Shown here in pieces: positions 5,929 through 62,162 of a stretch of DNA of 64,000 nucleotides. Where the stretch lies: the IMG/VR virus record IMGVR_UViG_3300032245_001746, positions 255,858-319,857 of that record; one strand, given 5' to 3'. Numbering within the stretch: position 1 is the first letter of the stretch; each line of letters begins with the position of its first letter. Below the pieces are notes generated by a model that was not told the origin of the DNA, did no database searches, and saw only the letters and a program-made list of their open reading frames with translations. Both the position numbers and the translations under genes were made by a program.

Positions 5929-6174
5929 TCAAACTAGGATGTCCCAGGTCTCACAAAGCGAATCAATTGCTTCGTTAATGGTCAGAACCATTGTCAACCA
6001 GTCATCGAAATCGAGAAGTCTTCCGACCAGAGTCTCAGCCTCCGAATAAAGCTGAGACTCTGCGAATTTCAACTGATCCACTAACTGAACAGCCGTATCG
6101 TATTCAGTACAGCGTTCTGCTTCGAACAGAACAGAGATCAGATGTGTTATCTCGTTTTTGATTGATGCTATCAT
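5929..6174 (-). CDS. Hypothetical protein
   Basis: AGGAG RBS; TGA stop lies inside the repeat. Confidence 0.8.
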   Translation of the reverse strand: MIASIKNEITHLISVLFEAERCTEYDTAVQLVDQLKFAESQLYSEAETLVGRLLDFDDWLTMVLTINEAIDSLCETWDILV

Positions 6175-6206
6175 TTGTTTTCTCCTGATAGCATCAGATT
6201 GTACAA

Positions 6207-6446
6207 TCAAACTGGAATGCTGTTGTACTCTTCAACGGCAAGTGAAAACGACGTGAATCGTTTTGGTTCCTCGTCATTGTGTTGCACCACATAATTGACG
6301 TGATCAAGTCGAGACTTATCGCAATAGTAGGGCTTCACAACAACAACCAGGGATTTTTTCCCAATTCCAGAAACCGCACAGGATGCGATTGTTGTTGAGA
6401 CTTCTTGATCCTTCGTGCTTTCCAGATCGATTTCGTGTTTTCTCAT
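6207..6446 (-). CDS. Hypothetical protein
   Basis: GGAG RBS; stop inside the repeat. Confidence 0.8.
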   Translation of the reverse strand: MRKHEIDLESTKDQEVSTTIASCAVSGIGKKSLVVVVKPYYCDKSRLDHVNYVVQHNDEEPKRFTSFSLAVEEYNSIPV

Positions 6447-6503
6447 TGTTTTCTCCAAGTTTGTGGCTGACAACGAGATATTGTACAATCAAACTTGATG
6501 GTT

Positions 6504-6686
6504 CTACTTGGAAAAATAGAACCCAAACAAGCACACAACCGCAATTCCAAATGAAATGATCATTGCAGATCGAATCAGGAAAATCATTCCTTCGCCGCCA
6601 AAATGATTTGGGTTGGTTTCTTTATGCATTTTGACAGCGAGAGCCATCAAAAACAAGTTAAAGATGAAAATGAAGACGTAGATCAC
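6504..6686 (-). CDS. Small two-TM membrane protein
   Basis: AGGAG RBS, GTG start. Confidence 0.75.
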   Translation of the reverse strand: MIYVFIFIFNLFLMALAVKMHKETNPNHFGGEGMIFLIRSAMIISFGIAVVCLFGFYFSK

Positions 6687-6756
6687 TTGTTTTCTCCTGT
6701 TGTTTGTTTCTCGTATCGTTGTATTGTACAATCAAACTTGTTGATTTGTGAATAAA

Positions 6757-6787
6757 AAAACGGGGATAATTTAATTATCCCCGTTTT
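6757..6787 (-). terminator. Intrinsic terminator
   Basis: AAAACGGGGATAAT/ATTATCCCCGTTTT stem with U-tract. Confidence 0.85.
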
Positions 6788-6869
6788 ACAACACGACTAC
6801 GTATGGAACATTTATGTCAGCTTAAAGCTGCGTTTTGTTTTTGGGTCCAATCGAGTCGGGTGTTGTATC
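6787..6869 (-). ncRNA. Candidate small structured RNA, copy A
   Basis: ORF-free promoter-to-terminator unit, near-identical to 10359-10441, ends base-pair. Confidence 0.65.
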
Positions 6870-6890
6870 GTTGAATTGTACAATCAAACT

Positions 6891-7148
6891 TCAATCGATT
6901 TTGAATTCTGATCCGTCTGGAAGTTCAACTTTTGTGACATTTGGAATAAGTCCTTGTTCGCGACTGTCAAACAGTGCGGAACGCAGATCTTGTTCGTTTG
7001 GATTTGGCCAATGAATTGAGTTTGCTCCCTCAGTATGAGAGATCAAAATACAAACTCCATCGTCTTCGTAATGAGCCTTCATCAATTCGTCGACGATATC
7101 GTCTTCAGAAGTGTAAAGTGTTCCGTCGATTGCAATTAATCGCACCAT
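6891..7148 (-). CDS. Acidic hypothetical protein
   Basis: AAGGA RBS. Confidence 0.8.
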   Translation of the reverse strand: MVRLIAIDGTLYTSEDDIVDELMKAHYEDDGVCILISHTEGANSIHWPNPNEQDLRSALFDSREQGLIPNVTKVELPDGSEFKID

Positions 7149-7204
7149 TGATCGTTTCCTTTGAGGTTGACGTGTTTTGTATCAATGGATTGTACAATCA
7201 AACT

Positions 7205-7402
7205 TCAGTCAACAATCCAGACAATTTTGCCAGTGCCTTTAACAAAAGCAACCTCTTTGCCATCCTGTTTCACACATACGGGGCATCCGTCCATGCTATT
7301 TTCGGCGGTTCGAAGTCCGTCCTGAACGCATTTTTCAACAGCTTTACGATCAGGCAGATTATTCGTTGGATGTGTGGTTCCGTTGTAATGCACTGAATAC
7401 AT
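7205..7402 (-). CDS. Hypothetical protein
   Basis: Start trimmed to MYSVH. Confidence 0.75.
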   Translation of the reverse strand: MYSVHYNGTTHPTNNLPDRKAVEKCVQDGLRTAENSMDGCPVCVKQDGKEVAFVKGTGKIVWIVD

Positions 7403-7459
7403 TGCGTTTTCCCCTGGATTACCTGTGATTGTTCTGAGAGGGGATTGTACAATCAAACT

Positions 7460-7783
7460 TCAATCCCAACTTACAAGGTCCCAGCGAACCTCACCTGTAT
7501 CTCGCAGGATTTCGAGCATTTGAATTGCTTGCAATGGAGTGGCTTGTTCTACTTTTCCACACATGTATCCATTAAATTCTGGATAAACGACACGTTCAGA
7601 TTGTCTTACAGGCACACCCGTGAAGTCGGCAAACAAATCAGGACTTATGAAATGTTCGTATTGCGGTTTGCAGACGGTTCGAATATGTCCAGCAATACAA
7701 CGTTCAAGACTCCACATGTCAAATGAGTCTTCATTAACATTCTTCAAAATGTCAATGGCTTTTTGCACATTTGGATAGATCAT
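7460..7783 (-). CDS. Hypothetical protein
   Basis: Start trimmed to MIYPNV. Confidence 0.8.
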   Translation of the reverse strand: MIYPNVQKAIDILKNVNEDSFDMWSLERCIAGHIRTVCKPQYEHFISPDLFADFTGVPVRQSERVVYPEFNGYMCGKVEQATPLQAIQMLEILRDTGEVRWDLVSWD

Positions 7784-7861
7784 TTGCTCATTCCGTTTTG
7801 TTTGGGGCTGATATCGATATCGGTTCATTGTACAATCAAAATTCATTGATTAAGTACAAGA

Positions 7862-7899
7862 GAAAACGGCAAAGATGGCGTACATCCCTACCGTTTTTC
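7862..7899 (-). terminator. Intrinsic terminator
   Basis: AAAACGG...CCGTTTT imperfect stem. Confidence 0.65.
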
Positions 7900-7922
7900 A
7901 GTTCTAAAGTTTGGGAGCTTGA

Positions 7923-7994
7923 TCAAACTGAAGAACGATTTCGATTTCGAATTTTTCGCAGGACGATTCCTGTCAGCAGGAACAATGAAATCAT
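7923..7994 (-). CDS. 23-aa hydrophobic/basic peptide MISLFLLTGIVLRKIRNRNRSSV
   Basis: GGAG RBS, own promoter at 8033; below ORF-track cutoff. Confidence 0.55.
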   Translation of the reverse strand: MISLFLLTGIVLRKIRNRNRSSV

Positions 7995-8065
7995 TTGTTT
8001 ACTCCGTTCGGGTGAAGGGCTGATACGGTTACATTGTACAATCAAACTTAATTAATTAAGTATAA

Positions 8066-8104
8066 GAAAAAACGAATGAGGTTCTTACTCTCATTCGTTT
8101 TTTC
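8066..8104 (-). terminator. Intrinsic terminator
   Basis: GAAAAAACGAATGAG/CTCATTCGTTTTTTC. Confidence 0.85.
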
Positions 8105-8266
8105 TTTTTTTCATAGAGGAGACTATGCGGCGTAGATTAGTCTCTCAGCACTCTTATTTCCCTGCAACATTTGGGTTGACCATCACCAAAATTAGGTCTT
8201 GTTGTTTAAGTACAACAAGCAAAACTAATTATTTTGTAGTACATCAACTCATTGTACAATCAAACT

Positions 8267-8458
8267 TCAACCGCCAATACTCCAATGAGATGGCTTTGTT
8301 GGTTTTTGAATGGTCACATATCGTCTTCCATCAACAATTCTGATGGTTTTGACACTTCCATCTGGCAATCTCACCGTTCCAGATCCATTCGAACAACGAG
8401 TTTGTGTGTCATGTCTGTCATGTGTGTCGTAATAGCCACCATATAGGTTTTTGCTCAT
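8267..8458 (-). CDS. Hypothetical protein
   Basis: AAGGA RBS. Confidence 0.75.
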   Translation of the reverse strand: MSKNLYGGYYDTHDRHDTQTRCSNGSGTVRLPDGSVKTIRIVDGRRYVTIQKPTKPSHWSIGG

Positions 8459-8517
8459 GTTTGTTTCCTTCTGACATCGTCATATTGTACAATCAAACTT
8501 CATTGATTAAGTATAAG

Positions 8518-8547
8518 AAAAAACAGGAATGTTTCATTCCTGTTTTT
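8518..8547 (-). terminator. Intrinsic terminator
   Basis: AAAAACAGGAATG/CATTCCTGTTTTT. Confidence 0.85.
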
Positions 8548-8652
8548 AGCGATTTTTGGATAAAATTAGTGTTTTACTCGTTACTTATACAGTAGTATAT
8601 ACTAACGTGGTATACCTTTGTATAAGAACATCGCCAAACGCTCTACACTAAT
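8548..8652 (-). ncRNA. Candidate pseudoknotted RNA motif, copy 1 of 3
   Basis: Conserved with 24954-25039 and 25529-25606, with covarying stems. Confidence 0.7.
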
Positions 8653-8696
8653 CCAGCTTTATCAATACCCTAAAGCTGGAAATCGGGATAAATTAG

Positions 8697-8769
8697 TGGT
8701 GCCGGTGGGAATCGAACCCACGACCATCGGATTAAAAGTCCGGTGCTCTACCAACTGAGCTACGACACC
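8697..8769 (-). tRNA. tRNA-Lys(UUU), no encoded CCA
   Basis: GGTGTCG/CGGCACC acceptor, CTTTTAA anticodon loop, GTTCGATTC T-loop. Confidence 0.95.
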
Positions 8770-8795
8770 AATACTGTCAGATTGTACAATCAAAC

Positions 8796-9035
8796 TTACC
8801 AGCCGTAATCGGATGGATCGAAACAAGACATGTCTGGATCTGTATCTAGTTCCAGATCTAAATCCTCATCCAGATATTCATCCAAATAGCTGTCATTACA
8901 GCAACCACATGGACAATACTGATCATATTCCAGATAGGAAAAATACAGATCTTCCAATTCGAGTTCTTCACGAACTTGTTCTTCTCTTTCGAGACGTTGT
9001 TCTTCGTTGAATTTTGCTACCAGGTTTTTTGACAT
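8796..9035 (-). CDS. Very acidic small protein with CPCGCC motif
   Basis: AGGAG RBS; about 25 D/E in 79 aa. Confidence 0.8.
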   Translation of the reverse strand: MSKNLVAKFNEEQRLEREEQVREELELEDLYFSYLEYDQYCPCGCCNDSYLDEYLDEDLDLELDTDPDMSCFDPSDYGW

Positions 9036-9069
9036 TGTTGTTCTCCTGAAGCAGGATTGTACAATCAAA

Positions 9070-9363
9070 CTAAATCATAGCAGCATTTCGAGCCGCACAT
9101 TTTCGTGCATAGTGCAATGATGGAGAATCACGTTTCAGTACAATTAAACCCTTTTTCTGAGTTTCATACATCCAGGTAACGCAGATTGCCTGGTTGACTT
9201 CTCCATTCTGATTTTCAATTTCCACTTCAGTTTCGCCAACAGGAATTTCTTCCTGTTCTTTCATGGTGGGAATGTCGTATCCCATGAAATCATTGGCTAA
9301 CGCATGGAAATAAATCCATGATACTGTGTTTTTTGGAAACGCATCGTAATGAAACAATCGCAT
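9070..9363 (-). CDS. Hypothetical protein
   Basis: TAG stop overlaps the repeat. Confidence 0.8.
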   Translation of the reverse strand: MRLFHYDAFPKNTVSWIYFHALANDFMGYDIPTMKEQEEIPVGETEVEIENQNGEVNQAICVTWMYETQKKGLIVLKRDSPSLHYARKCAARNAAMI

Positions 9364-9376
9364 TTGATTTGATCCT

Positions 9377-9440
9377 ATAGGTGGATATTACAGCAAGGTG
9401 TTTCACCTTTGTGTCTTATTTTGCTGTAATATCCACCTAT
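9377..9440. repeat. Perfect 20-bp inverted repeat in a 5' leader
   Basis: ATAGGTGGATATTACAGCAA / TTGCTGTAATATCCACCTAT, 24-nt loop. Confidence 0.9.
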
Positions 9441-9460
9441 CATCAGATTGTACAATCAAA

Positions 9461-9772
9461 CTAAGTGGTATCCCAATTTTCTTTCCAGAAAAGTGGCCAG
9501 GATTCTTCTGAATACCACGCTTCCCCCCACGATGGAGAGTCGTTTTCGTTGACTTCTTTCACTTTATCAGGATATTTTTCACATGCCTGATCAAATGAAA
9601 TTGATGTTTCATAAACGGCATCGTGCCATTTCATGGTTTGATGATCGATTTTGTTTCCAGGCAGAACCTTAGAACCGTTCGGAAAATAATATCCTCCCGG
9701 CTTGACTTCTGTCATTGCATCAGTCAATTCCTTTTCAGGATAACTACCTTGAGGCACAAGCAGAATTTTCAT
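9461..9772 (-). CDS. Hypothetical protein
   Basis: AAGGA RBS; stop overlaps the repeat. Confidence 0.8.
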   Translation of the reverse strand: MKILLVPQGSYPEKELTDAMTEVKPGGYYFPNGSKVLPGNKIDHQTMKWHDAVYETSISFDQACEKYPDKVKEVNENDSPSWGEAWYSEESWPLFWKENWDTT

Positions 9773-9818
9773 TGTGTATTCCTTGTGAAGTGATAAATCT
9801 CAATTGTACAATCAAACT

Positions 9819-9983
9819 TCATCGATCGGACTGATCTGGACCGTTTCCATATGGACCAACATATTTTGTTGATTCTGGTTTAGAAACGGGATCTGTCAAA
9901 GCTACACCGTTGCCGTATGGACCAACGTAATCAGATTTTTTCTTTTCGTCAACCTGAACGTCGATTTTAATTGTGATTGTCAT
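9819..9983 (-). CDS. Small protein with duplicated YVGPYGNG octapeptide
   Basis: Start trimmed to MTITIK. Confidence 0.7.
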   Translation of the reverse strand: MTITIKIDVQVDEKKKSDYVGPYGNGVALTDPVSKPESTKYVGPYGNGPDQSDR

Positions 9984-10048
9984 GATTGTTCTCTTTGAGA
10001 TTGTGATATCACTACATTGTACAATCAAACTTCATTGATTAAGTACGA

Positions 10049-10084
10049 CAAAAAATGCATGGATTTATTTCCATGCATTTTTTG
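10049..10084 (-). terminator. Intrinsic terminator
   Basis: CAAAAAATGCATGGA/TCCATGCATTTTTTG. Confidence 0.85.
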
Positions 10085-10326
10085 TTTTTCAATATAGGAG
10101 AAGAAATCAGATTTCAGGGGGAGCACGATTATTAATCATGGATGTGTCCAATATTGGATCGGGCTGCGGCGAATATTAGAGATGAAAAGAAAGAAATTTA
10201 TGTTTTAGGTCATGTCCTCATGGTAGTTTCTCCTTGACTAGTGGTTTTTGTTTTAGTTAAGTTTAACTTTTCTAACGTTCGTTGCATCGCAACATTGTAC
10301 AATCAAACTTCATTGATTAAGTACAT

Positions 10327-10359
10327 AAAAAAACAGAGATAAATTAATATCTCTGTTTT
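10327..10359 (-). terminator. Intrinsic terminator
   Basis: AAAACAGAGAT/ATCTCTGTTTT. Confidence 0.85.
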
Positions 10360-10441
10360 ACAACACGACTACGTATGGAACATTTATGTCAGCTTATTTG
10401 CTGGTATTGTTTTTGGGTCCAATCGAGTCGGGTGTTGTATC
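10359..10441 (-). ncRNA. Candidate small structured RNA, copy B
   Basis: Duplicate of 6787-6869 with its own promoter and terminator. Confidence 0.65.
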
Positions 10442-10461
10442 AATGGATTGTACAATCAAAC

Positions 10462-10638
10462 TCACTTCGTGAAGCTCAAAAGTGAAGCTACAAATCCAAC
10501 AAAACACCACAAAATCAACCAAATATGAGCCAATTTGATTGAAATTGGCAGTTTTTCTTTTTCTACCCAATGACCAATTGAGATGAAAATCACGAGAGAA
10601 GTCACCAACATTGCAAAAATAGCTTGGAATGTTGTCAT
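10462..10638 (-). CDS. Small two-TM membrane protein
   Basis: AAGGA RBS, MTTFQ start. Confidence 0.75.
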   Translation of the reverse strand: MTTFQAIFAMLVTSLVIFISIGHWVEKEKLPISIKLAHIWLILWCFVGFVASLLSFTK

Positions 10639-10713
10639 GTTTGTTTCCTTGTTTGATTTTTGATTCACTTCGATATCGGTTCATTGTACAATCAAACTTT
10701 TTATTGTTTTAAC

Positions 10714-10744
10714 AAAAAAAACAGGGATATTTCTATCCCTGTTT
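10714..10744 (-). terminator. Intrinsic terminator
   Basis: AAACAGGGATA/TATCCCTGTTT. Confidence 0.85.
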
Positions 10745-10769
10745 AATCGATTCTCTGAGATTTCTCAGA

Positions 10770-11180
10770 TTATGCAGCTTCTGCCGTTGTCGTCGGTTCC
10801 AGAACAACAGTTTCGACGGTTTCTTCTGCCGTTTCCGTTGTTTCGAGGACAACAGTTTCAGTTTCTTCGTCCGTTGGCAGTTCGACGTTCAGGTGTTCGC
10901 AGATCAGTTCGAGCATATCTGCGTTCTTGTCCGTCTTCGCGTCAACAATCGTGTCGATCAGAGAGGTAACAATTGTTCCCTTGAGGAACTGGAGAAGATA
11001 GTAACAGGCGAGTTCTGCGTCAGAACCCTGTTCCAGTGTCGCCATGAACTTGGCAAATACTTTTGCCATTGTCTTGTCGATTGTGCCGCCCTGTGAGTTC
11101 TTATTCTTAGAACCCTTCGGGCGTCCACGTCCACGCTTAGGAGCTTCGACGTTTACAGTTGTTTCGGCTGAATTTCCCAC
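10770..11180 (-). CDS. AT-hook protein with acidic C-terminal tail
   Basis: PKRGRGRPKGSKNKNS motif; E/T-rich tail. Confidence 0.8.
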   Translation of the reverse strand: MGNSAETTVNVEAPKRGRGRPKGSKNKNSQGGTIDKTMAKVFAKFMATLEQGSDAELACYYLLQFLKGTIVTSLIDTIVDAKTDKNADMLELICEHLNVELPTDEETETVVLETTETAEETVETVVLEPTTTAEAA

Positions 11181-11366
11181 GGCAGTAACCCTTTCAGAAT
11201 TGTTTTTGACTTGTCAACACCGTTGTTGACATCGTCATATTGTACAATCAAACTTCAAAGCCCTTCTCAACTTAGAGAAGGAAGTTTGACCTGACTCTTC
11301 CGAGTCATCTTTGAGTCATCCTTATGAGGAATCATTGTACAATCAAACTTAATTGATTTAAGGAAT

Positions 11367-11397
11367 AAAAAAAGCAGAGATGTATTATCTCTGCTTT
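11367..11397 (-). terminator. Intrinsic terminator after tRNA-Arg
   Basis: AAAGCAGAGAT/ATCTCTGCTTT. Confidence 0.85.
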
Positions 11398-11405
11398 ATA
11401 ATAAA

Positions 11406-11479
11406 TGTCCCCATCAGGGATCGAACCTGAAACCTACTGCTTAGAAGGCAGTTGCTCTATCCAATTGAGCTACGAGGAC
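11406..11479 (-). tRNA. tRNA-Arg(UCU), no CCA
   Basis: ACTGC-CTTCTAA-GCAGT anticodon arm; GTCCTCG/TGGGGAC acceptor. Confidence 0.92.
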
Positions 11480-11483
11480 AAAA

Positions 11484-11623
11484 GAAACAGACCGATTCAG
11501 CATTTCACTATCAATCAGGTGATACGCCCTTACTGGAACTGATATCCAATATTGAATATCAAAAGACGTTTTAAAGTGAAATTTTTTATTAATCCAGTTT
11601 ATCAGAATTGCTCAGTCTGTTTC
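11484..11623 (-). ncRNA. Candidate multi-stem RNA co-transcribed ahead of tRNA-Arg
   Basis: Nested stems plus a 7-bp pseudoknot, no ORF. Confidence 0.55.
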
Positions 11624-11646
11624 TAACTTCAAATTGTACAATCAAA

Positions 11647-11895
11647 CTATGCTGCGAGTCCAATTCGTTGATTCAATGAATTGAAGACACTTTCAACAAG
11701 TTGCTGTCCTGGAATCGGAAGATATTGCAACGTGAGAAGTCCATCGGTTTCAAGATCAAAAACAGACCCTACGTCTTCCATTTTGAATTCATAGGATTTC
11801 TGATTTGTGCATCTGACATAAAGTTCAACTCCTTTTTCAAAGGAAAGAAGTTTTGAACTTGTAGAATCATTTGTCAACAGAACGAAAAAAAACAT
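11647..11895 (-). CDS. Hypothetical protein
   Basis: AAGGA RBS; stop overlaps the repeat. Confidence 0.75.
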   Translation of the reverse strand: MFFFVLLTNDSTSSKLLSFEKGVELYVRCTNQKSYEFKMEDVGSVFDLETDGLLTLQYLPIPGQQLVESVFNSLNQRIGLAA

Positions 11896-11948
11896 GTTTG
11901 TTTCCTTGTGTTGTTTGAACCGACATCAACACATTGTACAATCAAACA

Positions 11949-12296
11949 TCACCAGCCGAATTCGATTTTTGACCGAACTTCATCAGACAATCCAGCTACA
12001 AAAACGGTCAAAGAAAAATCTTTGATCAATTTTCTGTAAACTTTGACACAATCAACAAAAGTTTTACAATCAATGTGAAAATCACGGAAATTGTCATTGT
12101 AGCCAAAAACATAGAATTCTGTTTTTGGTTTTGGTCTGGATTCGACACAGCCGCATTTTTCGCCATCAACACACAATGCGTCCAAAAATCCTTTTTTTGC
12201 ACGCCGATGTGCTTGCCACCATAGTGGACTTTTGTACTTTGGTGAAAAAACATCACCACAACTTTCACAAACAACATTGTACAGTGGAAGGTTCAT
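11949..12296 (-). CDS. Cys-rich putative zinc-binding protein
   Basis: CESC and further Cys; AAGGAG RBS. Confidence 0.75.
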   Translation of the reverse strand: MNLPLYNVVCESCGDVFSPKYKSPLWWQAHRRAKKGFLDALCVDGEKCGCVESRPKPKTEFYVFGYNDNFRDFHIDCKTFVDCVKVYRKLIKDFSLTVFVAGLSDEVRSKIEFGW

Positions 12297-12353
12297 CAGT
12301 GTTCTCCTTGATGACGAATCATTGTACAATCAAACTTTTTTGATTTAATCAAT

Positions 12354-12376
12354 AAAAAAGGAGGGTTTCCCCTCCT
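12354..12376 (-). terminator. Intrinsic terminator
   Basis: AGGAGGG/CCCTCCT with U-tract. Confidence 0.7.
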
Positions 12377-12405
12377 AGTAGTTTTAAATTGTAGAACGCT
12401 GTTTG

Positions 12406-12510
12406 CTAGAGTCCGAATTGATCCAGCAATTCTTCCAGACGACGCAATTCTCGTCGGTTCAAGCGATATCCAACAGACTTCAATCCGATAAGTCGGTCGA
12501 GTTCTTCCAT
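12406..12510 (-). CDS. 34-aa protein MEELDRLIGLKSVGYRLNRRELRRLEELLDQFGL
   Basis: Fills a promoter-terminator unit; below track cutoff. Confidence 0.6.
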   Translation of the reverse strand: MEELDRLIGLKSVGYRLNRRELRRLEELLDQFGL

Positions 12511-12564
12511 TTTTCTTTTTTCCAGAAGGGAGTGAAACAAATTGAACAACGTCACATTGTACAA

Positions 12565-12732: not shown

Positions 12733-12782
12733 TTTTGTTTTCCTGAGATTCACTAGATCAGAGATATGAGTACATTGTACAA

Positions 12783-13231: not shown

Positions 13232-13338
13232 AATTTTAATTTTATTTAAAAATCTGAATACGCTCACATAATTCATTTTTGGTTGATTAGTCCAAAAATT
13301 GCTTTAGGAAGTCCAACCCTACTTAGACTCCTGCTAAA

Positions 13339-54760: not shown

Positions 54761-55543
54761 TTAAATGAGAAGTCCATGATCATTATAATCTGTATCATCT
54801 TTTGATGATGATTTAATCAAACGATTGTTTTCGTCATATATGTTCTTTTGCCAATAACCGTCTGAACTCTTATAATAGGTCACATTTCCAAACATGTTAT
54901 ATTCAACATAAAATCCAATAAGATTCAACAATTCATTTTGATCAGTAATTTCTCTTACAATACGAATTTTATTTGTTACTGTTTTATCATATTCTGTTTC
55001 TGAATCGCCCAAATCTTCAATTTCAAGCAATTTAAAGTTATATTGATGAGGGTAATATTTCAACACATCTTTAGCATTTTTGCAATAATGAAAGCCATAA
55101 AAACATGGAAGTGGCTTTCCTGATAATTCATAAGTTTCCCCGATTTTAAACTCATGTCCACGACAAACATAGTTATATGTACCTTTATATCCTTTTTTTT
55201 CTTCTTTATAATTTGTCACTTGATTATCTAGCAATTTTTGCATTTTATTTGTTGTTTCGATTGCATCTTGTTTTGCTAAATTCATAGCTTTTTCATCGGT
55301 TCCATAAAACACTTCTGTATTTGACATAGAACCAGATGAAAGTTTAAATCTCACACAACCCATAAAACCTTTGCCGTGAAATGCACGAACATGTGCAATA
55401 AAAGCATAATAATATTCTGTTTCGTAAAAAACAGAACCTTTGTGATGATAAACCACTGTGTTAATTGTTGGATGTTCATTCATTTTTTCAGGATGAAGAG
55501 TGTTTTGCCACAAATTTTCATTATCATAGAAGTTGTCAGACAT
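54761..55543 (-). CDS. Family B domain fused to an unrelated N-terminal domain
   Basis: KGYKGTYNYVC motif starts at about residue 117. Confidence 0.85.
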   Translation of the reverse strand: MSDNFYDNENLWQNTLHPEKMNEHPTINTVVYHHKGSVFYETEYYYAFIAHVRAFHGKGFMGCVRFKLSSGSMSNTEVFYGTDEKAMNLAKQDAIETTNKMQKLLDNQVTNYKEEKKGYKGTYNYVCRGHEFKIGETYELSGKPLPCFYGFHYCKNAKDVLKYYPHQYNFKLLEIEDLGDSETEYDKTVTNKIRIVREITDQNELLNLIGFYVEYNMFGNVTYYKSSDGYWQKNIYDENNRLIKSSSKDDTDYNDHGLLI

Positions 55544-55591
55544 TTTATTTTACCTTCATGTTAAACAGCCAGTTTCTACTTGCTTATTTTT

Positions 55592-55789
55592 TCAACTCAA
55601 CAAATAATTAATATTGTAAAGAATACATGAAACTATAATAAGACTAGTAATTAAAAATGACCAAGCGGTTATTTTACCGATGTTTTTACTTGTTCCAGTA
55701 AACATAATAATTAATACATTAAAAGCAAGATATGCAAAAACAAATGAGAAATAATTTGAAACCGAGTTCCAGAATAGATTCCAATTCAT
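55592..55789 (-). CDS. Two-TM membrane protein
   Basis: Hydrophobic. Confidence 0.75.
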   Translation of the reverse strand: MNWNLFWNSVSNYFSFVFAYLAFNVLIIMFTGTSKNIGKITAWSFLITSLIIVSCILYNINYLLS

Positions 55790-55836
55790 GATTGTGCTTT
55801 CTACAAAAATTTTAGAAAATTGTATTTTGTCTGTTT

Positions 55837-56082
55837 TCAGATAATAGAAATTGCCAACACTTCATTTGCTTGTGGAGAATAATCATCTGCTTTATCTCCA
55901 ACGATTGTGCCACACATATCAATGTAAACCACATTTAACATATTTACTTCATCAATAAACTGAACATCTTTTGAATCATTATCATTTTGATGAAGACCAA
56001 TATATGTGTTTTCGCCATATTTTTCAATTAACAAATTGACTGCATCTCTTAGAGTTCTAAGAGTGTTGAAATTATAGTGCAT
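55837..56082 (-). CDS. Hypothetical protein
   Basis: ORF on coding strand. Confidence 0.7.
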   Translation of the reverse strand: MHYNFNTLRTLRDAVNLLIEKYGENTYIGLHQNDNDSKDVQFIDEVNMLNVVYIDMCGTIVGDKADDYSPQANEVLAISII

Positions 56083-56223
56083 GTTTTTGATCTTTCAATT
56101 TTTGAAGAATAGTCAATTCGCTATATGTGAATAAAAAATATAAATGATGACCGTTTTCGGTAAACAAAATGGCATCAGCAGGAGAAACATGTTTATCTAA
56201 TGTTTGAATTAAATCTCTAATTT

Positions 56224-56772
56224 TCATGATGCAATTTTTTCTAATTCTTGAATTCTTAAATTAAAATCATCTAACAATTTTTGAAAATTAAAAGTTTTAG
56301 ATAATCTTTCAACATGTTTGGCAAGATAATATAAAGCTTTTTTATCTGAATGATTATTAAATGAATATTTGTAATAACAAAATGCTGGAAGCCACACGGC
56401 AGATTTAACTAATTCCTGAGCAGAATCGTTCAAATTAAAATGTTTTTCAGCAGATAGTTGAAATGCCCAAACTCTAGCTTCTCGTTTTACCTGATCTGAT
56501 GTTTGTGGTTCATATCCCCAACTTGTTCCAACTTGCCAGAATTTACCATAATAAAATCCCCAATTTCTTGATGGGAATTTTTTCAATCGTCTGATATCTA
56601 ATTCAGCAAAATGGCATATTTCGTGAAATAAATTAGATAAATTTAAACTTGGACCAGCAGCCGCACCAACAAAATAAGACTTTTCTTCACAAATTTGTCC
56701 TTCCATTTTACTTCTTAGTTGAAAAATGGGGCTTTGAAAGAATGTCTTTTTTATTTCATGTGCAATCGACAT
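56224..56772 (-). CDS. HExxH protein (loose resemblance to EF-P hydroxylase EpmC family)
   Basis: LFHEICHF...RR...GY.P...Q...E...WAFQ. Confidence 0.45.
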   Translation of the reverse strand: MSIAHEIKKTFFQSPIFQLRSKMEGQICEEKSYFVGAAAGPSLNLSNLFHEICHFAELDIRRLKKFPSRNWGFYYGKFWQVGTSWGYEPQTSDQVKREARVWAFQLSAEKHFNLNDSAQELVKSAVWLPAFCYYKYSFNNHSDKKALYYLAKHVERLSKTFNFQKLLDDFNLRIQELEKIAS

Positions 56773-56912
56773 TGTTTTCTTTCAATTTCTAAGTTAACAT
56801 AAAATTCTTTTCCATTAATCATGGAAATACATGTTTTAGTTATGTAAATGCCATCATGGGGATCAAGAGTTTAGTTATTGAAGAAATGTGATAGATATTA
56901 ATAACACCAGAT

Positions 56913-57362
56913 TCAACATGAATGAACAGAGGTTTTTGATTTGTCATAATCATTTTGGTTTTTTCTTTCCTTTAAAGGAAAAATTGCTTCACCCCAAGAT
57001 TGACCTGCATCTTGATTCATTTGAACTGGATTTAAATAGTAAAAATTAAAAGAAGTTTCTCCAAAATCAGCAAGCAATGCCGAAATTGTTTTATCGCTTT
57101 TCATTTCATAATCATCATCCCAACCCATATTTTGTAAAGCCTGACCAAAAATGCATCCTTTGCATTCTGGACCAAGAATTATATTTACATTTGATTTGGA
57201 TTTTGCTGATCCATTATAATAACATTGAGCATCTAGTTTTCGATAGGCTGTATTGTAAATAAAATCGGGATTTTCTGTTCCCAACTTAATTACTTCTGCA
57301 TTTAATGAATCAGCAAATTCATTAACAGATGAATGTTTCCCAATAACTTCTTTTAAATTCAT
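56913..57362 (-). CDS. Family A protein
   Basis: Paralog motif. Confidence 0.9.
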   Translation of the reverse strand: MNLKEVIGKHSSVNEFADSLNAEVIKLGTENPDFIYNTAYRKLDAQCYYNGSAKSKSNVNIILGPECKGCIFGQALQNMGWDDDYEMKSDKTISALLADFGETSFNFYYLNPVQMNQDAGQSWGEAIFPLKERKNQNDYDKSKTSVHSC

Positions 57363-57388
57363 TTTTTTCTCCAATTAATATTATGTAA

Positions 57389-57730
57389 TTACCAATTATA
57401 TTTTTGAAATGAATCAACTTTGTATGCATCTGCATCGAATTCAATTATAACGGCAGATACTGAATTTGCGTATTCAATAATTGGTTTAAACCAATCAGGA
57501 GTGTCTTCTGTCATATCTGTTACCCAAACGATCCAGCCATATTCAGATTCAACAACGCGATATGATCCAAATTTTGGTGCCGGTCCTGGAACGTGGACTG
57601 TTGATAATTGCAACATATTATTCACAATACGTTCTTGGTGTCCACAATTGTTGCAATATCCGTTAGCATCACAACTCATTAAATGAGTTCCAAACATCGT
57701 ACATTGTTCAATATTTGAATGGTTAGGCAT
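57389..57730 (-). CDS. Hypothetical protein with N-terminal Cys/His cluster
   Basis: HLMSCD..GYCNNCGH. Confidence 0.7.
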   Translation of the reverse strand: MPNHSNIEQCTMFGTHLMSCDANGYCNNCGHQERIVNNMLQLSTVHVPGPAPKFGSYRVVESEYGWIVWVTDMTEDTPDWFKPIIEYANSVSAVIIEFDADAYKVDSFQKYNW

Positions 57731-57796
57731 TTGAGTTCCTTAAATTAAACAAATAAATTTTAATTTTTTTGATTCTTATGTAAGTTCATTGTACAA

Positions 57797-58405
57797 TCAA
57801 ACTTTTGAATATGTTTCACGTTTTGTTATTTCATATCCATTTTCATCATATGTTGATTCAGAAAAATATCCACTTGAATTTTTGTGTGTCAACCGACATC
57901 CATTGTGATCATATGTTGATTCAGAAAAATATCCATTTGAATCCTTATAGTTAAGAAGAGAACCATTTTCATTGTGTGTTTGTTCATACGAAAATCCTCT
58001 GGAATGTTTGTATGTCGACACATTGCCATTTTTGTCATATGTATATTCATACCAATATCCATAAGAATCTTTACATCTAAACAATTTACCATTTTCATTA
58101 TAAATTCTATGACATCCAATTAATTGAATTAATTCATCTGGATCATTAATTTCTCGAATAATTCTTATCTTGTCTGTACAAGATTTATCATTTTCTTCAA
58201 TTGTGAATAAACCTAAATCTTCAATTTCCAATAATTTGAATCGCCTTGTATATGAATAATGTTTCAATGTATTTCTAGCATTTTTGCAATAATGAAATCC
58301 ACGTGAACACATAATTGGCTTTTCTGACAATTCATAAGTTTGACCAATTTCAAATTTAAAATCGCGACAAACAAAATCGTAGGTAGCTTTATATCCAATT
58401 TTCAT
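57797..58405 (-). CDS. Family B protein with 24-aa tandem repeats
   Basis: Paralog motifs; SSGYFSESTYD repeats 72 bp apart; stop in the repeat. Confidence 0.9.
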   Translation of the reverse strand: MKIGYKATYDFVCRDFKFEIGQTYELSEKPIMCSRGFHYCKNARNTLKHYSYTRRFKLLEIEDLGLFTIEENDKSCTDKIRIIREINDPDELIQLIGCHRIYNENGKLFRCKDSYGYWYEYTYDKNGNVSTYKHSRGFSYEQTHNENGSLLNYKDSNGYFSESTYDHNGCRLTHKNSSGYFSESTYDENGYEITKRETYSKV

Positions 58406-58444
58406 TTTATTATTTTCTATTTTAAATGTAAAAAGTTATTTAAC

Positions 58445-58633
58445 TTATGATGCTAAAAAATAGCAAATTGCAAAATAAACAGCCCAGATGAAACCAATGG
58501 GTATAAGCCAAAAAAACCTATAAATTGATCCAAAATCATAATGACTTGTTCTATGATAAGGTCTAAACAACATAATTAAACAGAACAATGTTGCAGCGAT
58601 TGGAATAAAGATTGCATTAATTGTAATTGACAT
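58445..58633 (-). CDS. Two-TM membrane protein
   Basis: Hydrophobic. Confidence 0.75.
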   Translation of the reverse strand: MSITINAIFIPIAATLFCLIMLFRPYHRTSHYDFGSIYRFFWLIPIGFIWAVYFAICYFLAS

Positions 58634-58643
58634 AAATTTTTTT

Positions 58644-59042
58644 CTAAGAAATTAGTTCACTAATAGATTTTTTCCAAGATCCACCTAAATCCTGGCAAGC
58701 CTGAGTTCGTCTGAACTTTTCAAGCAAATCCTGATATTTTATTTCATAATTAAGAATTAAAGTATTTAAATACGTGTCAATTCTAAGTGACATTCCTAAT
58801 TCATCATAATTATTGCATCCCATATTTTGTAGGGCTTGACCGAAAATACAACCATTACATTTTGGACCTACAATAGATCCTATTTTGTTTTTTGCTGGAC
58901 CGTAGTATGTACAAAATCCTTCTCTATTAGGATTATAAACAAAATCAGGATTGCTTGTTCCTAATTTAATTACTTCTTGCTTTAAAGCTTCAAGAAATTC
59001 AAGTTTTGAATTAAACTTATTGCAAATATCAATTAACTTCAT
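58644..59042 (-). CDS. Family A protein
   Basis: Paralog motif (CNGCIFGQAL); start trimmed to MKLID. Confidence 0.9.
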   Translation of the reverse strand: MKLIDICNKFNSKLEFLEALKQEVIKLGTSNPDFVYNPNREGFCTYYGPAKNKIGSIVGPKCNGCIFGQALQNMGCNNYDELGMSLRIDTYLNTLILNYEIKYQDLLEKFRRTQACQDLGGSWKKSISELIS

Positions 59043-59076
59043 CGTTATTAATCTTTTCTTGAATAGGACATTATAA

Positions 59077-59376
59077 CTAGAAATTTGTAACACACAAATT
59101 GTGTCGTTCAATCTTTTTTGATAAAAGCAAACAGATTTTGTCCAATAAGACAAAATCTGTTTTTTCTTTTGAATTTAAAGAGGCACATTCAATATTAAAT
59201 GCACAGTTTGAATTCATAACACAATTAATACGAAATAATTGTTTTCCATATCTGAATTGATAATAAAAATTCTTAGAACGCAAATTTAATATTCCAAAAA
59301 TTTTAGGATTGGAATATCCACTTATCAATAAAGTATCTTTTTCTCGTATCCAATTGTACAATGTTATTAAATTCAT
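59077..59376 (-). CDS. Hypothetical protein
   Basis: Coupled to the 576-aa gene. Confidence 0.65.
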   Translation of the reverse strand: MNLITLYNWIREKDTLLISGYSNPKIFGILNLRSKNFYYQFRYGKQLFRINCVMNSNCAFNIECASLNSKEKTDFVLLDKICLLLSKKIERHNLCVTNF

Positions 59377-61106
59377 TATTGCTCCTTGAATAAATTAACA
59401 AATGTATCCTTGTTTACTTTATTCACAGATAAATCAATATCTGCTTCGGCTACATCAGAAACAATTTCTGCTCCAGCATCTGATAAAATTGTTTTCAAAC
59501 CGACTTGAAACAATGAGTTTTCAACTAATGCAGTTAATCCATTAGCCTTAGATGAAACTCTAGCATTTCCACTTCCGCCATTTACTACTACAAAATAATT
59601 AGATCCCAATATTCCCAGCGTTGTTTGTTTCTGAGAAGAAACTACATATTCATCAATAATAACATTATTTGGGTCCATTAAATATTGTTTTGAAATATCT
59701 TCTCCATCTCCAACAATTAACTTAAATTTAGTGTTTTCTTGACCATAGAATATATTTGCTGTAACTAAACTAAATTGATCACCACGATTATTATCGCAAT
59801 GAATGTATTCTACAGCACCATTAACTGCATTCGTAATATCTCCACTGTATGTTAATCCATTTCTCGTCCATGATGAATTCCATCCCACCTTAGAATTATT
59901 AATATCCATTGATGACAAATCAATATCATGAGCACCCCAACTATTTTCCCAATAAATCCCAACTACAAGTCGTTTGCCATAAATTTTAGTGCCCACAGGT
60001 ATATTGCCAACAAACATTTTTTCCGAAGTTGGCAACGCATAATCTACATTAGATGGAATATAGATTCGCTTACCAGAAAGATTAAATCTCTTGCGTAGAT
60101 ATTGTGTTAAAAATGAATAATTATTCAGACACACATCTGTATTTGGATTGGTATTGTTTTCAACAAATGTTTTTCCATTTCTTACTCTATAACTAAAGCT
60201 TTTTTGACCATTAACACGTGTAGCAACAGCGTTAATAGCTTTAAATAAAGAAAAAATTGTTGCATTATCAAGCCAATGAATATCATTTTCAGTAAGTTTA
60301 GTTGTTGTTACACAATTTAAAGCATTTACTGGAATAGGTTTGTGATACTTCTTAGATAGTTTTGACAACTTGTTGATTAATGCTGGACAAAAAGATTTCA
60401 TTGCCAAAAACAATGGTTTATATCGATTGAAAATCGATGATACTTTGTCCAATCCAAATCGTTCAAACAATTCGGTTGGATCATAATATGATTTCTTCAT
60501 TAATTCAATTGATGATTGATTAACAATAAGAAGTGTAGAACCAGTTTTCTTAAAAAACACATAACGAAATAAATCCATCACATTACTTGGAACAATTCCG
60601 TATCGGTCCATAATACGAATTGTTGCTTCTTTATTTTTGACGGAAAAACCATCATTAAACTTAACATTTAACTCTTGCAATAAATCAAGAATTAAATTAA
60701 TTGTTTCTTCTTTGAGTGCCAATCCAGAATTGAGCATGTTCATACATTTATTTTTCAATTCTTCAGAGGTACACGCTTTAATCACACGTACTTTTAATTT
60801 TTGATCAGGAATATTATGAACTTCTTCTGGAATATACATTTCTCCCTCGAACATATTTCCATATGTCGAAATGTAATGCAAAACTTGATCCATCAATCGC
60901 TTTAGTGTATCACCAGAACTTGCAAATGATTTGTAAAATCCTGCATTCAATTGCTTTGGTGTCAAATTTTTAGAATTGAAATATGTTTCAACTGCTCTTT
61001 GTGCATAAAGAGTATTTGGCATAAATACATAGCCATCGTTATTTACGATAATATCTTTGTTTGATTCTTTTGCCAAAACAACACCAAATAATTCAAGGCT
61101 TTTCAT
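59376..61106 (-). CDS. 576-aa protein with helical N-terminal region and TerD-like C-terminal domain
   Basis: GIYW...DIDLS...VGWN...YSGDIT.A..GA.EYI resembles TerD-type beta-sandwich motifs. Confidence 0.6.
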   Translation of the reverse strand: MKSLELFGVVLAKESNKDIIVNNDGYVFMPNTLYAQRAVETYFNSKNLTPKQLNAGFYKSFASSGDTLKRLMDQVLHYISTYGNMFEGEMYIPEEVHNIPDQKLKVRVIKACTSEELKNKCMNMLNSGLALKEETINLILDLLQELNVKFNDGFSVKNKEATIRIMDRYGIVPSNVMDLFRYVFFKKTGSTLLIVNQSSIELMKKSYYDPTELFERFGLDKVSSIFNRYKPLFLAMKSFCPALINKLSKLSKKYHKPIPVNALNCVTTTKLTENDIHWLDNATIFSLFKAINAVATRVNGQKSFSYRVRNGKTFVENNTNPNTDVCLNNYSFLTQYLRKRFNLSGKRIYIPSNVDYALPTSEKMFVGNIPVGTKIYGKRLVVGIYWENSWGAHDIDLSSMDINNSKVGWNSSWTRNGLTYSGDITNAVNGAVEYIHCDNNRGDQFSLVTANIFYGQENTKFKLIVGDGEDISKQYLMDPNNVIIDEYVVSSQKQTTLGILGSNYFVVVNGGSGNARVSSKANGLTALVENSLFQVGLKTILSDAGAEIVSDVAEADIDLSVNKVNKDTFVNLFKEQ

Positions 61107-61131
61107 GATTTTTCTTTTCTTTTTAAAAAAT

Positions 61132-61297
61132 GGGCGAGAAGTAATTGAATTTAGAAAATTTTTTTATAGGAACTTCTTTTGCCCTAAAACTAAAAGAGAC
61201 GAAGAGTAAATTGCATAGTCGTTTAATAGGAACTCTTTTTGTCTCAAATTAAGATGAAGAGTAATTTACCAAAAAAATAGGAACTCTTTTTATCTTA
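61132..61297 (-). ncRNA. Three tandem covarying hairpins in the 5' leader of the 576-aa gene
   Basis: Units 61132-61184, 61196-61245, 61250-61297. Confidence 0.75.
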
Positions 61298-61352
61298 ATC
61301 ATCTATCCATTGTACAACCAAACTTGATAAATGGTAACACTTTTTTTAGAAC

Positions 61353-61682
61353 TTACATGTTATCATTATTTTTTTTAATGAAATTTGATTCATCTAACAC
61401 GTGAATCATAATTACTACTAAATCATCAATTTTAAATTCATTTAATGGTGACGTACATAAACCACCACTCCAACTATCTGTTGATGCCCAATTTTCTCCA
61501 ATTATATCACACTTTTCATCACAAGATGAAAGTTTGACAGGTTTAATTTTTGCAAGTTTTAATAATTCTCCACTTTTATTATCATCGACATAACCAGAAC
61601 GATAAAGATGAGGAATCACACATTTGTTTATGTGTGCAATTATTTTCTTGCGTGCTTTTCTAATTGAAGAAATTTCGCTCAT
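61353..61682 (-). CDS. Hypothetical protein
   Basis: After tRNA-Lys. Confidence 0.75.
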   Translation of the reverse strand: MSEISSIRKARKKIIAHINKCVIPHLYRSGYVDDNKSGELLKLAKIKPVKLSSCDEKCDIIGENWASTDSWSGGLCTSPLNEFKIDDLVVIMIHVLDESNFIKKNNDNM

Positions 61683-61710
61683 AATTACTTTCTAAATCAA
61701 GTTAATGAAG

Positions 61711-61783
61711 TGGTGCCGGTGGGAATCGAACCCACGACCATTGGATTAAAAGTCCAGTGCTCTACCAACTGAGCTACAACACC
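61711..61783 (-). tRNA. tRNA-Lys(UUU), third copy, no CCA
   Basis: GGTGTTG/CGGCACC acceptor, CTTTTAA loop. Confidence 0.95.
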
Positions 61784-61802
61784 ATATTTAAACATTGTAC
61801 AA

Positions 61803-62162
61803 TCAAACTTCAAATTTACATAAATGTCTATATAATTCAATATTTATTAAAATTTGATGTACGTGAATATCATTTGCTACAATTTCTAATTTTTTAATTT
61901 CTTTAAGATAATAATTACATCTATATTCTGCCCATTTTTTGGGAGATAAATCAAAATTTTCTGGTTTGCGTTCCCACAGTTCTTTTGCTTTTTCTAAAGT
62001 AATTATTTCTCCAAATAGCCATCCAGTTTTTTTACCAACATTATTTTCAATAAATTTCTCAAATTCTTTTTGAATTTCTTTAGGTGTTGATTCATAATAT
62101 TTTTCAATACACGAAAGAATTCTTTGCTTTGTTACTTGTACATAACCTATTGGATTATTCAT
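61803..62162 (-). CDS. Hypothetical protein
   Basis: Ends FEV-TGA in the repeat. Confidence 0.75.
   Translation of the reverse strand: MNNPIGYVQVTKQRILSCIEKYYESTPKEIQKEFEKFIENNVGKKTGWLFGEIITLEKAKELWERKPENFDLSPKKWAEYRCNYYLKEIKKLEIVANDIHVHQILINIELYRHLCKFEV

What the first reader, a model, noticed from the sequence alone, without database searches (positions are those of the whole stretch)
5929..61803. Upstream genes end inside the element: at least 24 ORFs use the TGA of GTT-TGA as their stop
Seen: ORFs with ends at 5929, 6207, 12565, 12783, 13547, 14130, 14910, 15460, 16169, 16734, 18005, 18429, 20079, 27032, 27483, 29574, 32902, 35711, 37729, 39487, 46506, 51540, 57797 and 61803 all stop exactly at element position +9. 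This gives unrelated proteins a shared ...EV*/...KV* C-terminus. Several more use TAG/TAA/TGA overlapping the element edge (9070, 9461, 11647, 8796, 10462). Inference: unrelated genes would not independently evolve this, so it looks like a junction scar from insertion or deletion at a fixed position. It parallels integron cassettes, whose stop codons often lie in the attC core.
Basis: partly seen in the sequence, partly recalled or inferred. Interest (0 to 1): 0.78.

Follow-up and report, generated by a model that had tools for sequence, protein, structure and literature searches.

The report
Phage promoter with built-in stop codon
A 17-base promoter-like signal is repeated over 100 times in the small-gene region of a roughly 530-kb phage, and because it contains a TGA and starts where the previous gene ends, about 30% of upstream genes stop inside it; related phages gain, lose and swap gene cassettes at the same signal.

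Summary
The element is AAGTTTGATTGTACAAT on the minus strand. It has 78 copies in the window, none on the other strand and none in the other 256 kb of the record. At least 29 more copies lie upstream on a 530,789-bp scaffold.

It precedes protein genes (Shine-Dalgarno site and start codon 30-75 nt downstream), tRNA genes and small non-coding units that end in terminators. About 14 copies sit a fixed 23-26 nt behind an intrinsic terminator. I read it as a phage promoter with a -10-like TACAAT and no -35. No transcript 5' ends were available to confirm this.

Of 55 genes that end near an element, 40 stop within the 17-mer or overlapping its 5' edge: 23 at the internal TGA, 9 at -4, 5 at -3 and 3 at -2. 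The frame bias is significant (p = 1e-4). The shared EV/KV ending is the translation of RAA-GTT-TGA and lies in variable protein tails.

Close relatives differ by whole-cassette insertions, deletions and replacements bounded by the element. "Junction" is therefore supported. An integron-like mechanism is not: no integrase, no attC-like structure, and every cassette has its own promoter. The closest known system is the PeSL promoter-terminator cassettes of T4-type phages.

The parts
5516..61810 (-). Array of 78 copies of the 17-nt element AAGTTTGATTGTACAAT, all in one orientation. Each copy spans G0-14 to G0+2 in + coordinates. The array continues beyond the window end.
   Evidence: list of G0 positions; for the continuation on the 530,789-bp scaffold.
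15451..15467 (-). Element whose TGA (15460-15462) ends the cREC_REC-domain gene 15460-15834 (124 aa, tail ...SIDEV).
   Evidence: The domain is complete. Homologues have tails of 5-25 aa, and only the 94% orthologue ends in EV.
27023..27039 (-). Element ending gene 27032-27454 (140 aa, ...WGEAIKPLLEV). Paralogues 27483-27938 and 46506-46664 end the same way at elements 27488 and 46511.
57788..57804 (-). Element ending DUF7666-family gene 57797-58405 (...TYSKV). Paralogues 32902-33462 and 39487-39999 also end in elements, while paralogue 54761-55543 stops at -13.
5920..6214 (-). Two consecutive elements (G0 5934 and 6212), each ending a 93-aa ORF at its internal TGA (ORFs 5929-6210 and 6207-6488).
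   Evidence: The orthologous cassettes in L123 are 96-99% identical.
7189..7460 (-). Examples of the -4 class: genes 7205-7456 and 7460-7846 stop at a TGA that overlaps the 5' edge of elements 7203 and 7458. The 314-bp cassette that starts at 7203 is absent from relatives.
   Evidence: joint 6862->7177, seen in three runs.
9056..9072 (-). Example of the -2 class: gene 9070-9363 stops at TAG overlapping the element. The relative L123 carries an extra 271-bp cassette inserted exactly here.
8696..8797 (-). Element 8795 followed 11 nt later by tRNA-Lys(UUU). The same arrangement occurs at 61808 (tRNA-Lys) and 16174 (tRNA-Leu).
10294..10463 (-). Non-coding cassette: element 10461, about 80 nt of structured RNA, an intrinsic terminator, then the next element 10308. 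A paralogous copy lies at 6723-6891.
8030..8106 (-). Composite terminator-promoter junction: hairpin, T-run, spacer TTATACTTAATTAATT, then element 8047. About 14 elements have the T-run starting at -23..-26.
35702..35718 (-). Element 35716.

Best explanation
The element is the promoter of the small-gene (probably early) region of a megaphage of about 531 kb.

Anatomy:
- It is a single 17-bp block, AAGTTTGATTGTACAAT, whose 3' end (TACAAT) resembles a -10 hexamer. It has no -35.
- A semi-conserved GAT(A/G)TC box lies about where transcription would start.
- Almost every transcription unit in more than 100 kb has its own copy.

How genes come to end in it:
- Units are packed so tightly that the next promoter begins at, or a few bases inside, the end of the previous gene.
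- The block contains TGA in one frame, so genes in that frame run into it and end ...(E/K/Q)-V-stop, the translation of RAA-GTT-TGA.
- Genes in the other two frames stop right at the 5' edge: TGA or TAA at -4, TAG at -2.

Role as a junction (inferred mechanism):
- The promoter copies are also the places where related phages gain, lose, duplicate and exchange element-to-element cassettes.
- This most likely happens by homologous recombination between the identical repeats, as described for PeSLs.
- The invariant TGA then works as a backstop. A gene whose own stop is lost, frameshifted or left behind by a rearrangement is still terminated cleanly in that frame. In the other frames it would read on into the next unit.
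- This would explain the excess of the TGA frame.

Shown: the anatomy, the stop statistics, and the cassette indels at elements. Inferred: promoter activity, the recombination mechanism, and the backstop ratchet.
For: One strand only and confined to one region: 78 copies in the window, 0 in the other 256 kb of the record, and 29 more further upstream.

Position relative to transcription units:
- 62 of 78 copies are followed by a Shine-Dalgarno site and start codon at +30..+75.
- Three are followed by a tRNA 8-11 nt after the block.
- Some head non-coding units that end in a terminator.
- Terminators are enriched, 42 against 11 expected. About 14 have the T-run at a fixed -23..-26.

Conservation: the 17-mer is identical in G001 and in the ERZ724522 contigs, whose shared paralogous gene-family sequences are only 68-80% identical to the window's. 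The TGA is invariant at the roughly 55 elements where no ORF ends.

Stops: 23 at +3; 40 of 55 lie within the block or overlap its 5' edge; frame bias p = 1.2e-4. The pattern holds in relatives: 33 of 79 families end at +3, frames 47/23/16. In the public gene calls on the scaffold, 9 of the 29 new elements end a gene at +3.

The tails are variable and the protein domains are intact.

Backstop seen directly: orthologues stop at -3 against +3, and at -19 against +3 after a frameshift.

Cassette events between L123 and the window are bounded by elements. Identity per cassette ranges from 82% to 99% (chi-square p = 5e-20).

The phage encodes a RecA-like recombinase.

PeSL precedent: PMC2839356 and PMC4122927.
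Against: - No transcript 5' ends were available. The RNA runs are kept only as contigs and gave no start sites.
- The block lacks a -35 and a canonical extended -10, and the two-hexamer sigma-70 scan is not enriched (78 against 65 +/- 8). The polymerase or factor that reads it is unknown.
- No RNA polymerase gene was detected in the 320 kb held. There is only one weak sigma-like ORF.
- Seventeen identical bases are short for RecA-type recombination.
- The junctions cannot be resolved inside the repeat, so a site-specific enzyme is not excluded.
- Heterogeneous identity between cassettes could partly reflect different selective constraint.
- One relative has an ORF that reads through an element, so read-through is not forbidden.
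Confidence: 0.72

Rival explanations
1. Pure compaction. The element is a promoter, and genes end in it only because intergenic space is minimised. It plays no part in recombination, and the frame excess is sampling noise or paralogy.
For: In all three frames, stops pile up at the last possible position (+3, -4, -2). The intergenic space is just promoter plus leader. Seven of the +3 genes belong to two paralogous families, three and four members.
Against: The frame bias survives collapsing paralogues (p = 1.4e-3) and adding relatives (47/23/16). Whole-cassette insertions, deletions and replacements between relatives are bounded by elements.
Confidence: 0.15
2. Integron-like system. The element is a site-specific recombination site at which a dedicated recombinase inserts and excises cassettes, and the GTT-TGA is the crossover scar.
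For: Cassette-sized indels occur exactly at the element. The core ATTGTACAAT is a perfect 10-bp palindrome of the kind a dimeric protein could bind. About 40% of the genome was not searchable.
Against: No tyrosine recombinase in 320 kb. The only serine recombinase lies about 170 kb away, directly upstream of a 400-aa ORF. There is no attC-like imperfect repeat or conserved cassette 3' end beyond the 17-mer. Every cassette has its own promoter and many have terminators. Recombination also occurred inside a repeated tRNA-Lys gene, which points to general homologous exchange.
Confidence: 0.07
3. Not a promoter. The block could be an RNA-level processing or cleavage signal, or an operator for a regulator, placed between cistrons of long transcripts.
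For: There is no direct transcription-start evidence. The palindrome suits a dimeric binding protein. RNA-run contigs span several cassettes.
Against: Terminator-then-element units, and element-RNA-terminator units, make sense only if transcription starts at the element. The block has a -10-like TACAAT at the right distance from tRNA 5' ends and from start codons. As RNA, the palindrome is too short to fold.
Confidence: 0.06

Closest known systems
PeSLs (promoter-early stem-loops) of T4-type phages (Arbiol et al. 2010, PMC2839356; Comeau et al. 2014, PMC4122927)
   Same: Both are repeated promoter(-terminator) motifs concentrated in a plastic region of small ORFan genes. In both, the upstream gene's stop codon lies in the motif's 5' part. 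In both, indels and replacements between close relatives are bounded by the motifs. In PeSLs this is attributed to homologous recombination between motif copies.
   Different: PeSLs are ordinary sigma-70 promoters (-35, -10, AT-rich upstream region) of loose sequence, about 50 per genome. Here the signal is a single, almost invariant 17-bp block without a -35, present more than 100 times. Its stop codon lies inside the invariant part, only about one copy in five has the terminator, and the phage is not visibly T4-like. Mini-circles were not testable.
Integron gene cassettes (attC sites)
   Same: Both are arrays of small, mostly unrelated genes, each bounded by a repeated site. Cassette ORFs may end in the site.
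   Different: No IntI integrase was found, there is no attC secondary-structure site, and the cassettes are not promoterless: each carries its own promoter.
Highly conserved promoters of phage-specific transcription (T7-type 23-bp promoters, T4 late TATAAATA, SPO1 gp28 promoters)
   Same: Both are a near-invariant contiguous block, repeated and specific to one temporal or regional class of phage genes, with no host-type -35.
   Different: The sequence is unrelated to these. No phage polymerase was identified, and only a weak sigma-like ORF. The copy number is far higher.

Membership tests
PeSL-type regulatory cassette | Repeated early-promoter motif upstream of ORFan genes in a hyperplastic region | tested here: met
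   78 copies in the window, nearly all in front of small genes without known families.
PeSL-type regulatory cassette | Sigma-70-like promoter with -35, -10 and an AT-rich upstream region | tested here: not met
   There is no information upstream of -5 in the position profile. The two-hexamer scan is not enriched.
PeSL-type regulatory cassette | Stem-loop or terminator as part of the motif | tested here: inconclusive
   A terminator sits at fixed spacing in about 14 of 78 copies. A weak excess of leader hairpins was seen. The rest have no hairpin.
PeSL-type regulatory cassette | Indels and replacements between close relatives bounded by the motif | tested here: met
   Six events between L123 and the window, and the joint 6862->7177 in three runs.
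PeSL-type regulatory cassette | Excised mini-circles | not testable with these tools
   This needs PCR or raw long reads.
Integron | IntI tyrosine recombinase next to the array | tested here: not met
   PF00589 is absent from the 320 kb held. The rest of the genome was not searched.
Integron | attC: imperfect inverted repeats of 57-141 bp at each cassette's 3' end | tested here: not met
   Conservation is limited to about -4..+25 around a 10-bp perfect palindrome.
Integron | Promoterless cassettes read from a common Pc promoter | tested here: not met
   Each cassette starts with the promoter-like block, and many end with terminators.
Bacterial sigma-70-type promoter | -10 hexamer TAnnnT at about 7 nt from the transcription start | tested here: inconclusive
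   TACAAT is invariant, and the distances to tRNA 5' ends fit. No start sites were mapped.

The most novel reading that the evidence does not exclude
The 17-mer is a dedicated three-in-one cassette junction: promoter, built-in stop codon and recombination site. It would organise more than 100 self-contained expression cassettes in a megaphage, a phage-borne cassette array as large as a super-integron. The array could be serviced by a protein that recognises the ATTGTACAAT palindrome, with the TGA kept partly because it terminates whatever gene lands upstream.
Probability: 0.15. Interest if true: 0.8.

Novelty: new variant of a known kind. Interest (0 to 1): 0.5.

Why it matters
It shows how a very large phage keeps more than 100 kb of fast-evolving accessory genes expressible while shuffling them. 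One short invariant signal starts each unit, ends the previous gene, and provides the homology for exchange.

It gives a simple sequence handle for delimiting cassettes and transcription units in an uncultured megaphage lineage found in wastewater and rivers.

It is also a warning for annotation. Many mechanical TTG-start ORFs begin inside the element, and the shared C-terminal EV/KV is not a protein motif.

Identifying what reads a promoter with no -35 and 17 invariant bases could reveal a new transcription factor or polymerase specificity.

Tried and rejected
- Megablast of 20 kb against the phage records found nothing.
- Literature search for the core sequence found nothing relevant.
- Pfam RNA polymerase families and a D-x-D-G-D scan found no polymerase in the 320 kb.
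- A 'stop barrier in all three frames' was rejected. Only 19 of 78 elements close all frames by +27, and frames B and C are closed in 56% against about 45% at random positions.
- A hidden -35 inside or downstream of the block was rejected from the position profile.
- Bacteroidota-type -33/-7 motifs are absent, and the genes have clear Shine-Dalgarno sites.
- Read laying on three metatranscriptomes gave contigs only and no transcript starts. Most of its 'joints' have a short side of about 20-26 nt, which is just the repeated element, so I did not count them as adjacencies.
- IMG/VR records G002 and G004, and the large metagenome contigs L047, L122, L087 and L124, were chance single matches unrelated to this phage.
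- Rfam found only tRNAs.
- No other highly repeated motif exists in the rest of the genome.
- No suppressor tRNA was found, so TGA is a true stop.
Full report
WHAT IS THERE

The window is the last 64 kb of a 319,857-bp IMG/VR virus record. The record has 28% G+C and CheckV rates it 63% complete. A 99.99% identical stretch lies on a 530,789-bp metagenome scaffold, so the phage genome is about 0.53 Mb.

The record encodes gyrase A and B, a DnaE-type polymerase, a UvrD-like helicase and a RecA-like protein. GyrB and DnaE carry inteins. It also encodes a tmRNA and a tRNA cluster.

All the genes concerned lie on the minus strand. The 'element' is AAGTTTGATTGTACAAT read on that strand. I number positions from the G of GTTTGA as 0, so the 17-mer runs from -2 to +14 and its TGA is at +3..+5.

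With 2 mismatches or fewer to the 15-mer there are 78 copies, all on the minus strand. G0 positions in window coordinates are: 61808, 61323, 57802, 54750, 52575, 51545, 48516, 46511, 45751, 44519, 43747, 42872, 41479, 39492, 38458, 37734, 35716, 32907, 32265, 31024, 29579, 29143, 27488, 27037, 26312, 26227, 25471, 25315, 24906, 23960, 22528, 22243, 21330, 20811, 20084, 19389, 18785, 18434, 18010, 17339, 16739, 16411, 16174, 15465, 15282, 14915, 14680, 14135, 13814, 13552, 13175, 12788, 12570, 12335, 11947, 11647, 11348, 11253, 10697, 10461, 10308, 10030, 9817, 9461, 9070, 8795, 8498, 8265, 8047, 7841, 7458, 7203, 6889, 6737, 6494, 6212, 5934, 5530.

There is no copy in the other 256 kb of the record and none on the other strand.

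Positions -1 to +14 are essentially invariant. Positions -4..-2 lean to T-G-A, and a GAT(A/G)TC box sits at +20..+25. Nothing is conserved further upstream.

Walking upstream on the large scaffold found 29 more copies in the next roughly 47 kb, all in the same orientation. The array therefore holds at least 107 copies over at least 105 kb, and its start was not reached.

THE OBSERVATION

At 35711 only a 7-codon ORF ends, and the real gene stops 46 nt earlier. The five 'edge' cases are correct.

The element's TGA closes an ORF of 45 aa or more in 23 of 78 cases. Other stop triplets on that strand do so in 4.8% of cases (p = 1e-12).

For the 55 elements with a gene ending within -25..+5, the stops are at +3 (23), -4 (9), -3 (5), -2 (3) and elsewhere (15). 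So 40 of 55 lie within the 17-mer or overlap its 5' edge.

The frame that contains the TGA is over-represented: 33/13/9 (p = 1.2e-4), or 29/13/9 after collapsing paralogues (p = 1.4e-3). Adding related contigs gives 79 families, 33 of them at +3, with frames 47/23/16.

Independent public gene calls on the large scaffold end at +3 at 9 of the 29 additional elements.

The 'EV/KV' ending is the translation of RAA-GTT-TGA. It applies to 11 of the 23. Twenty end in V, and the three exceptions are variant elements.

TGA is a genuine stop here. No suppressor tRNA is present, and homologous domains end before it.

WHAT THE ELEMENT IS

The evidence points to a promoter:
- It has strict strand and region specificity.
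- 62 of 78 copies are followed by a Shine-Dalgarno site and a start codon 30-75 nt from G0, median 53.
- Three copies are followed 8-11 nt later by a tRNA gene.
- Several head non-coding units of about 100 nt that fold and end in an intrinsic terminator.
- Terminators are four-fold enriched. About 14 elements have a terminator T-run at a fixed -23..-26, with a shared spacer.
- The 3' end, TACAAT, has the three key -10 positions. A start about 7 nt downstream falls in the GAT(A/G)TC box.

There is no -35 and no canonical TGn.

The 17-mer is identical in relatives whose shared paralogous gene-family sequences are only 68-80% identical to the window's. It is therefore under strong selection as a signal. 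The TGA is equally invariant where no gene ends.

Who reads the signal is open. I found no RNA polymerase gene, no D-x-D-G-D motif and only one weak sigma-like ORF in the 320 kb held. About 40% of the genome was not searchable.

No transcript 5' ends could be obtained. The RNA runs are stored as contigs, which span several cassettes at DNA-like depth.

IS IT A JUNCTION?

Yes, in the sense of a cassette boundary. I cut the window and the close relative L123 (ERZ724522 NODE-341, 24 elements) at each G0 and compared the pieces. Eighteen cassettes are colinear and align end to end.

The differences are whole cassettes:
- Two novel cassettes in L123, of 271 and 325 bp.
- One window cassette, of 314 bp, missing from L123.
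- One extra paralogous cassette in L123.
- One cassette whose interior is replaced while both ends are kept.
- One chimera, joined inside a repeated tRNA-Lys gene.

At each event the homology switches inside or right beside the 17-mer.

The 314-bp deletion is also seen in contigs of three other runs. Identity per cassette ranges from 82% to 99% (heterogeneity p = 5e-20), which is a mosaic pattern.

Within the window, several duplications start at -1/-2 of one element and end at +14/+17 of the next.

The phage has a RecA-like recombinase and no tyrosine recombinase. The one serine recombinase lies about 170 kb away.

ARE C-TERMINI REPLACED OR TRUNCATED?

In the cREC_REC family the domain is complete. 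Homologues have tails of 5-25 unrelated residues, and only the 94% orthologue ends in EV.

In the WGEAIK family the tails after the last conserved helix range from 1 to about 20 residues. Members next to an element have among the shortest tails, ending L-L-E-V or similar.

In the multi-copy DUF7666 family the ends fall in a variable repeat region.

So the element sits just behind the conserved core, and its first bases supply the last two residues.

Direct cases of the backstop exist. One orthologue pair stops at -3 against +3. In another, a frameshift moves the stop from -19 to the element's TGA. Conversely, in L123 an ORF in a frame without a stop reads about 33 codons into the next unit.

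HOW IT MOST LIKELY WORKS

Shown: the block, its positions, the stop statistics, and the cassette indels at elements.

Inferred:
- Transcription starts just downstream of the block.
- Compaction has brought each promoter against the preceding gene.
- Recombination between the identical copies shuffles cassettes.
- The invariant TGA rescues genes in its frame after stop loss, frameshift or rearrangement, while events in the other frames give long read-through and are lost. That would produce the frame excess.

COMPARISON AND NOVELTY

The closest known system is the PeSL of T4-type phages. PeSLs are repeated early promoter-terminator motifs in hyperplastic regions, with upstream stop codons in the motif and modular shuffling between copies (PMC2839356, PMC4122927).

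This case differs in several ways:
- The promoter is a single invariant block without a -35.
- The copy number is more than 100.
- The stop codon lies inside the invariant part.
- The host phage is a megaphage that is not visibly T4-like.

It fails the defining features of integrons. I rate it a new variant of a known kind, with moderate interest.

Noticed in passing
window 10322-10440 (-) and 6749-6868 (-); L123 1305-1421 and 5485-5601: Promoter-to-terminator units with no ORF. They form a conserved structured RNA of about 80 nt with a long-range stem, followed by an intrinsic terminator, in two copies per genome. There is no Rfam match. This is a candidate phage small RNA.
   Followed up: partly
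window, upstream of elements 25471, 24906 and 8498: A second repeated non-coding unit (ACGAGTAAAACACTAATT...AAAAATCGCT plus a terminator) occurs three times.
   Followed up: no
window, about 14 elements, e.g. 8047, 8498, 10030, 10308, 13175, 16411: There is a composite terminator-spacer-promoter with fixed spacing. The spacer ACTTAATCAATG forms an inverted repeat (AATCAA N6 TTGATT) with the start of the element. The core ATTGTACAAT is itself a perfect palindrome.
   Followed up: partly
G000:29678-30043 (-), i.e. L028 9678-10043: The phage encodes a tmRNA with tag peptide GETVRLAA. A cluster of 13 tRNA genes lies at G000 82.6-84.9 kb. The window holds 7 tRNAs, including three tRNA-Lys(UUU).
   Followed up: no
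G000:24232-27498, 33042-35528, 60772-63108: GyrB and the DnaE-type polymerase carry inteins with LAGLIDADG domains. The RecA-like ORF, at 779 aa, is long enough to hold one too.
   Followed up: no
window 63800-64000 (contig end): The record ends in an (ATCA)n microsatellite, which probably broke the assembly. The 530,789-bp scaffold continues through it.
   Followed up: partly
window 344-769 (+), 32902-34566, 39487-39999, 50560-51117, 54761-55543, 57797-58405 (-): A DUF7666 family has at least 8 paralogues in the window, with a conserved N-terminal domain and variable YD-like repeats at the C-terminus. Many more copies occur in relatives.
   Followed up: partly
window about 29080-29140 (behind element 29143): A 26-nt leader segment (GGCTATACAATCAAGGAAACAACAAT) is tandemly duplicated directly after the element.
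   Followed up: no
L123 2709-3045: In the relative, the ORF of a novel cassette reads through the next element (CAG instead of TAG at -2) for about 33 codons, and the next gene's ATG is ATT. This may be a recent and imperfect insertion.
   Followed up: partly
G000:90359-91970 (+): A serine-recombinase (resolvase) ORF is followed directly by a 400-aa ORF. This could be an IS607-like insertion element. The second ORF was not analysed.
   Followed up: no
window, whole array: Many TTG-start ORFs in mechanical ORF lists begin inside the element, because GTTTGATTG holds two TTGs. These are artefacts, and the true starts are the downstream ATGs preceded by a Shine-Dalgarno site.
   Followed up: yes
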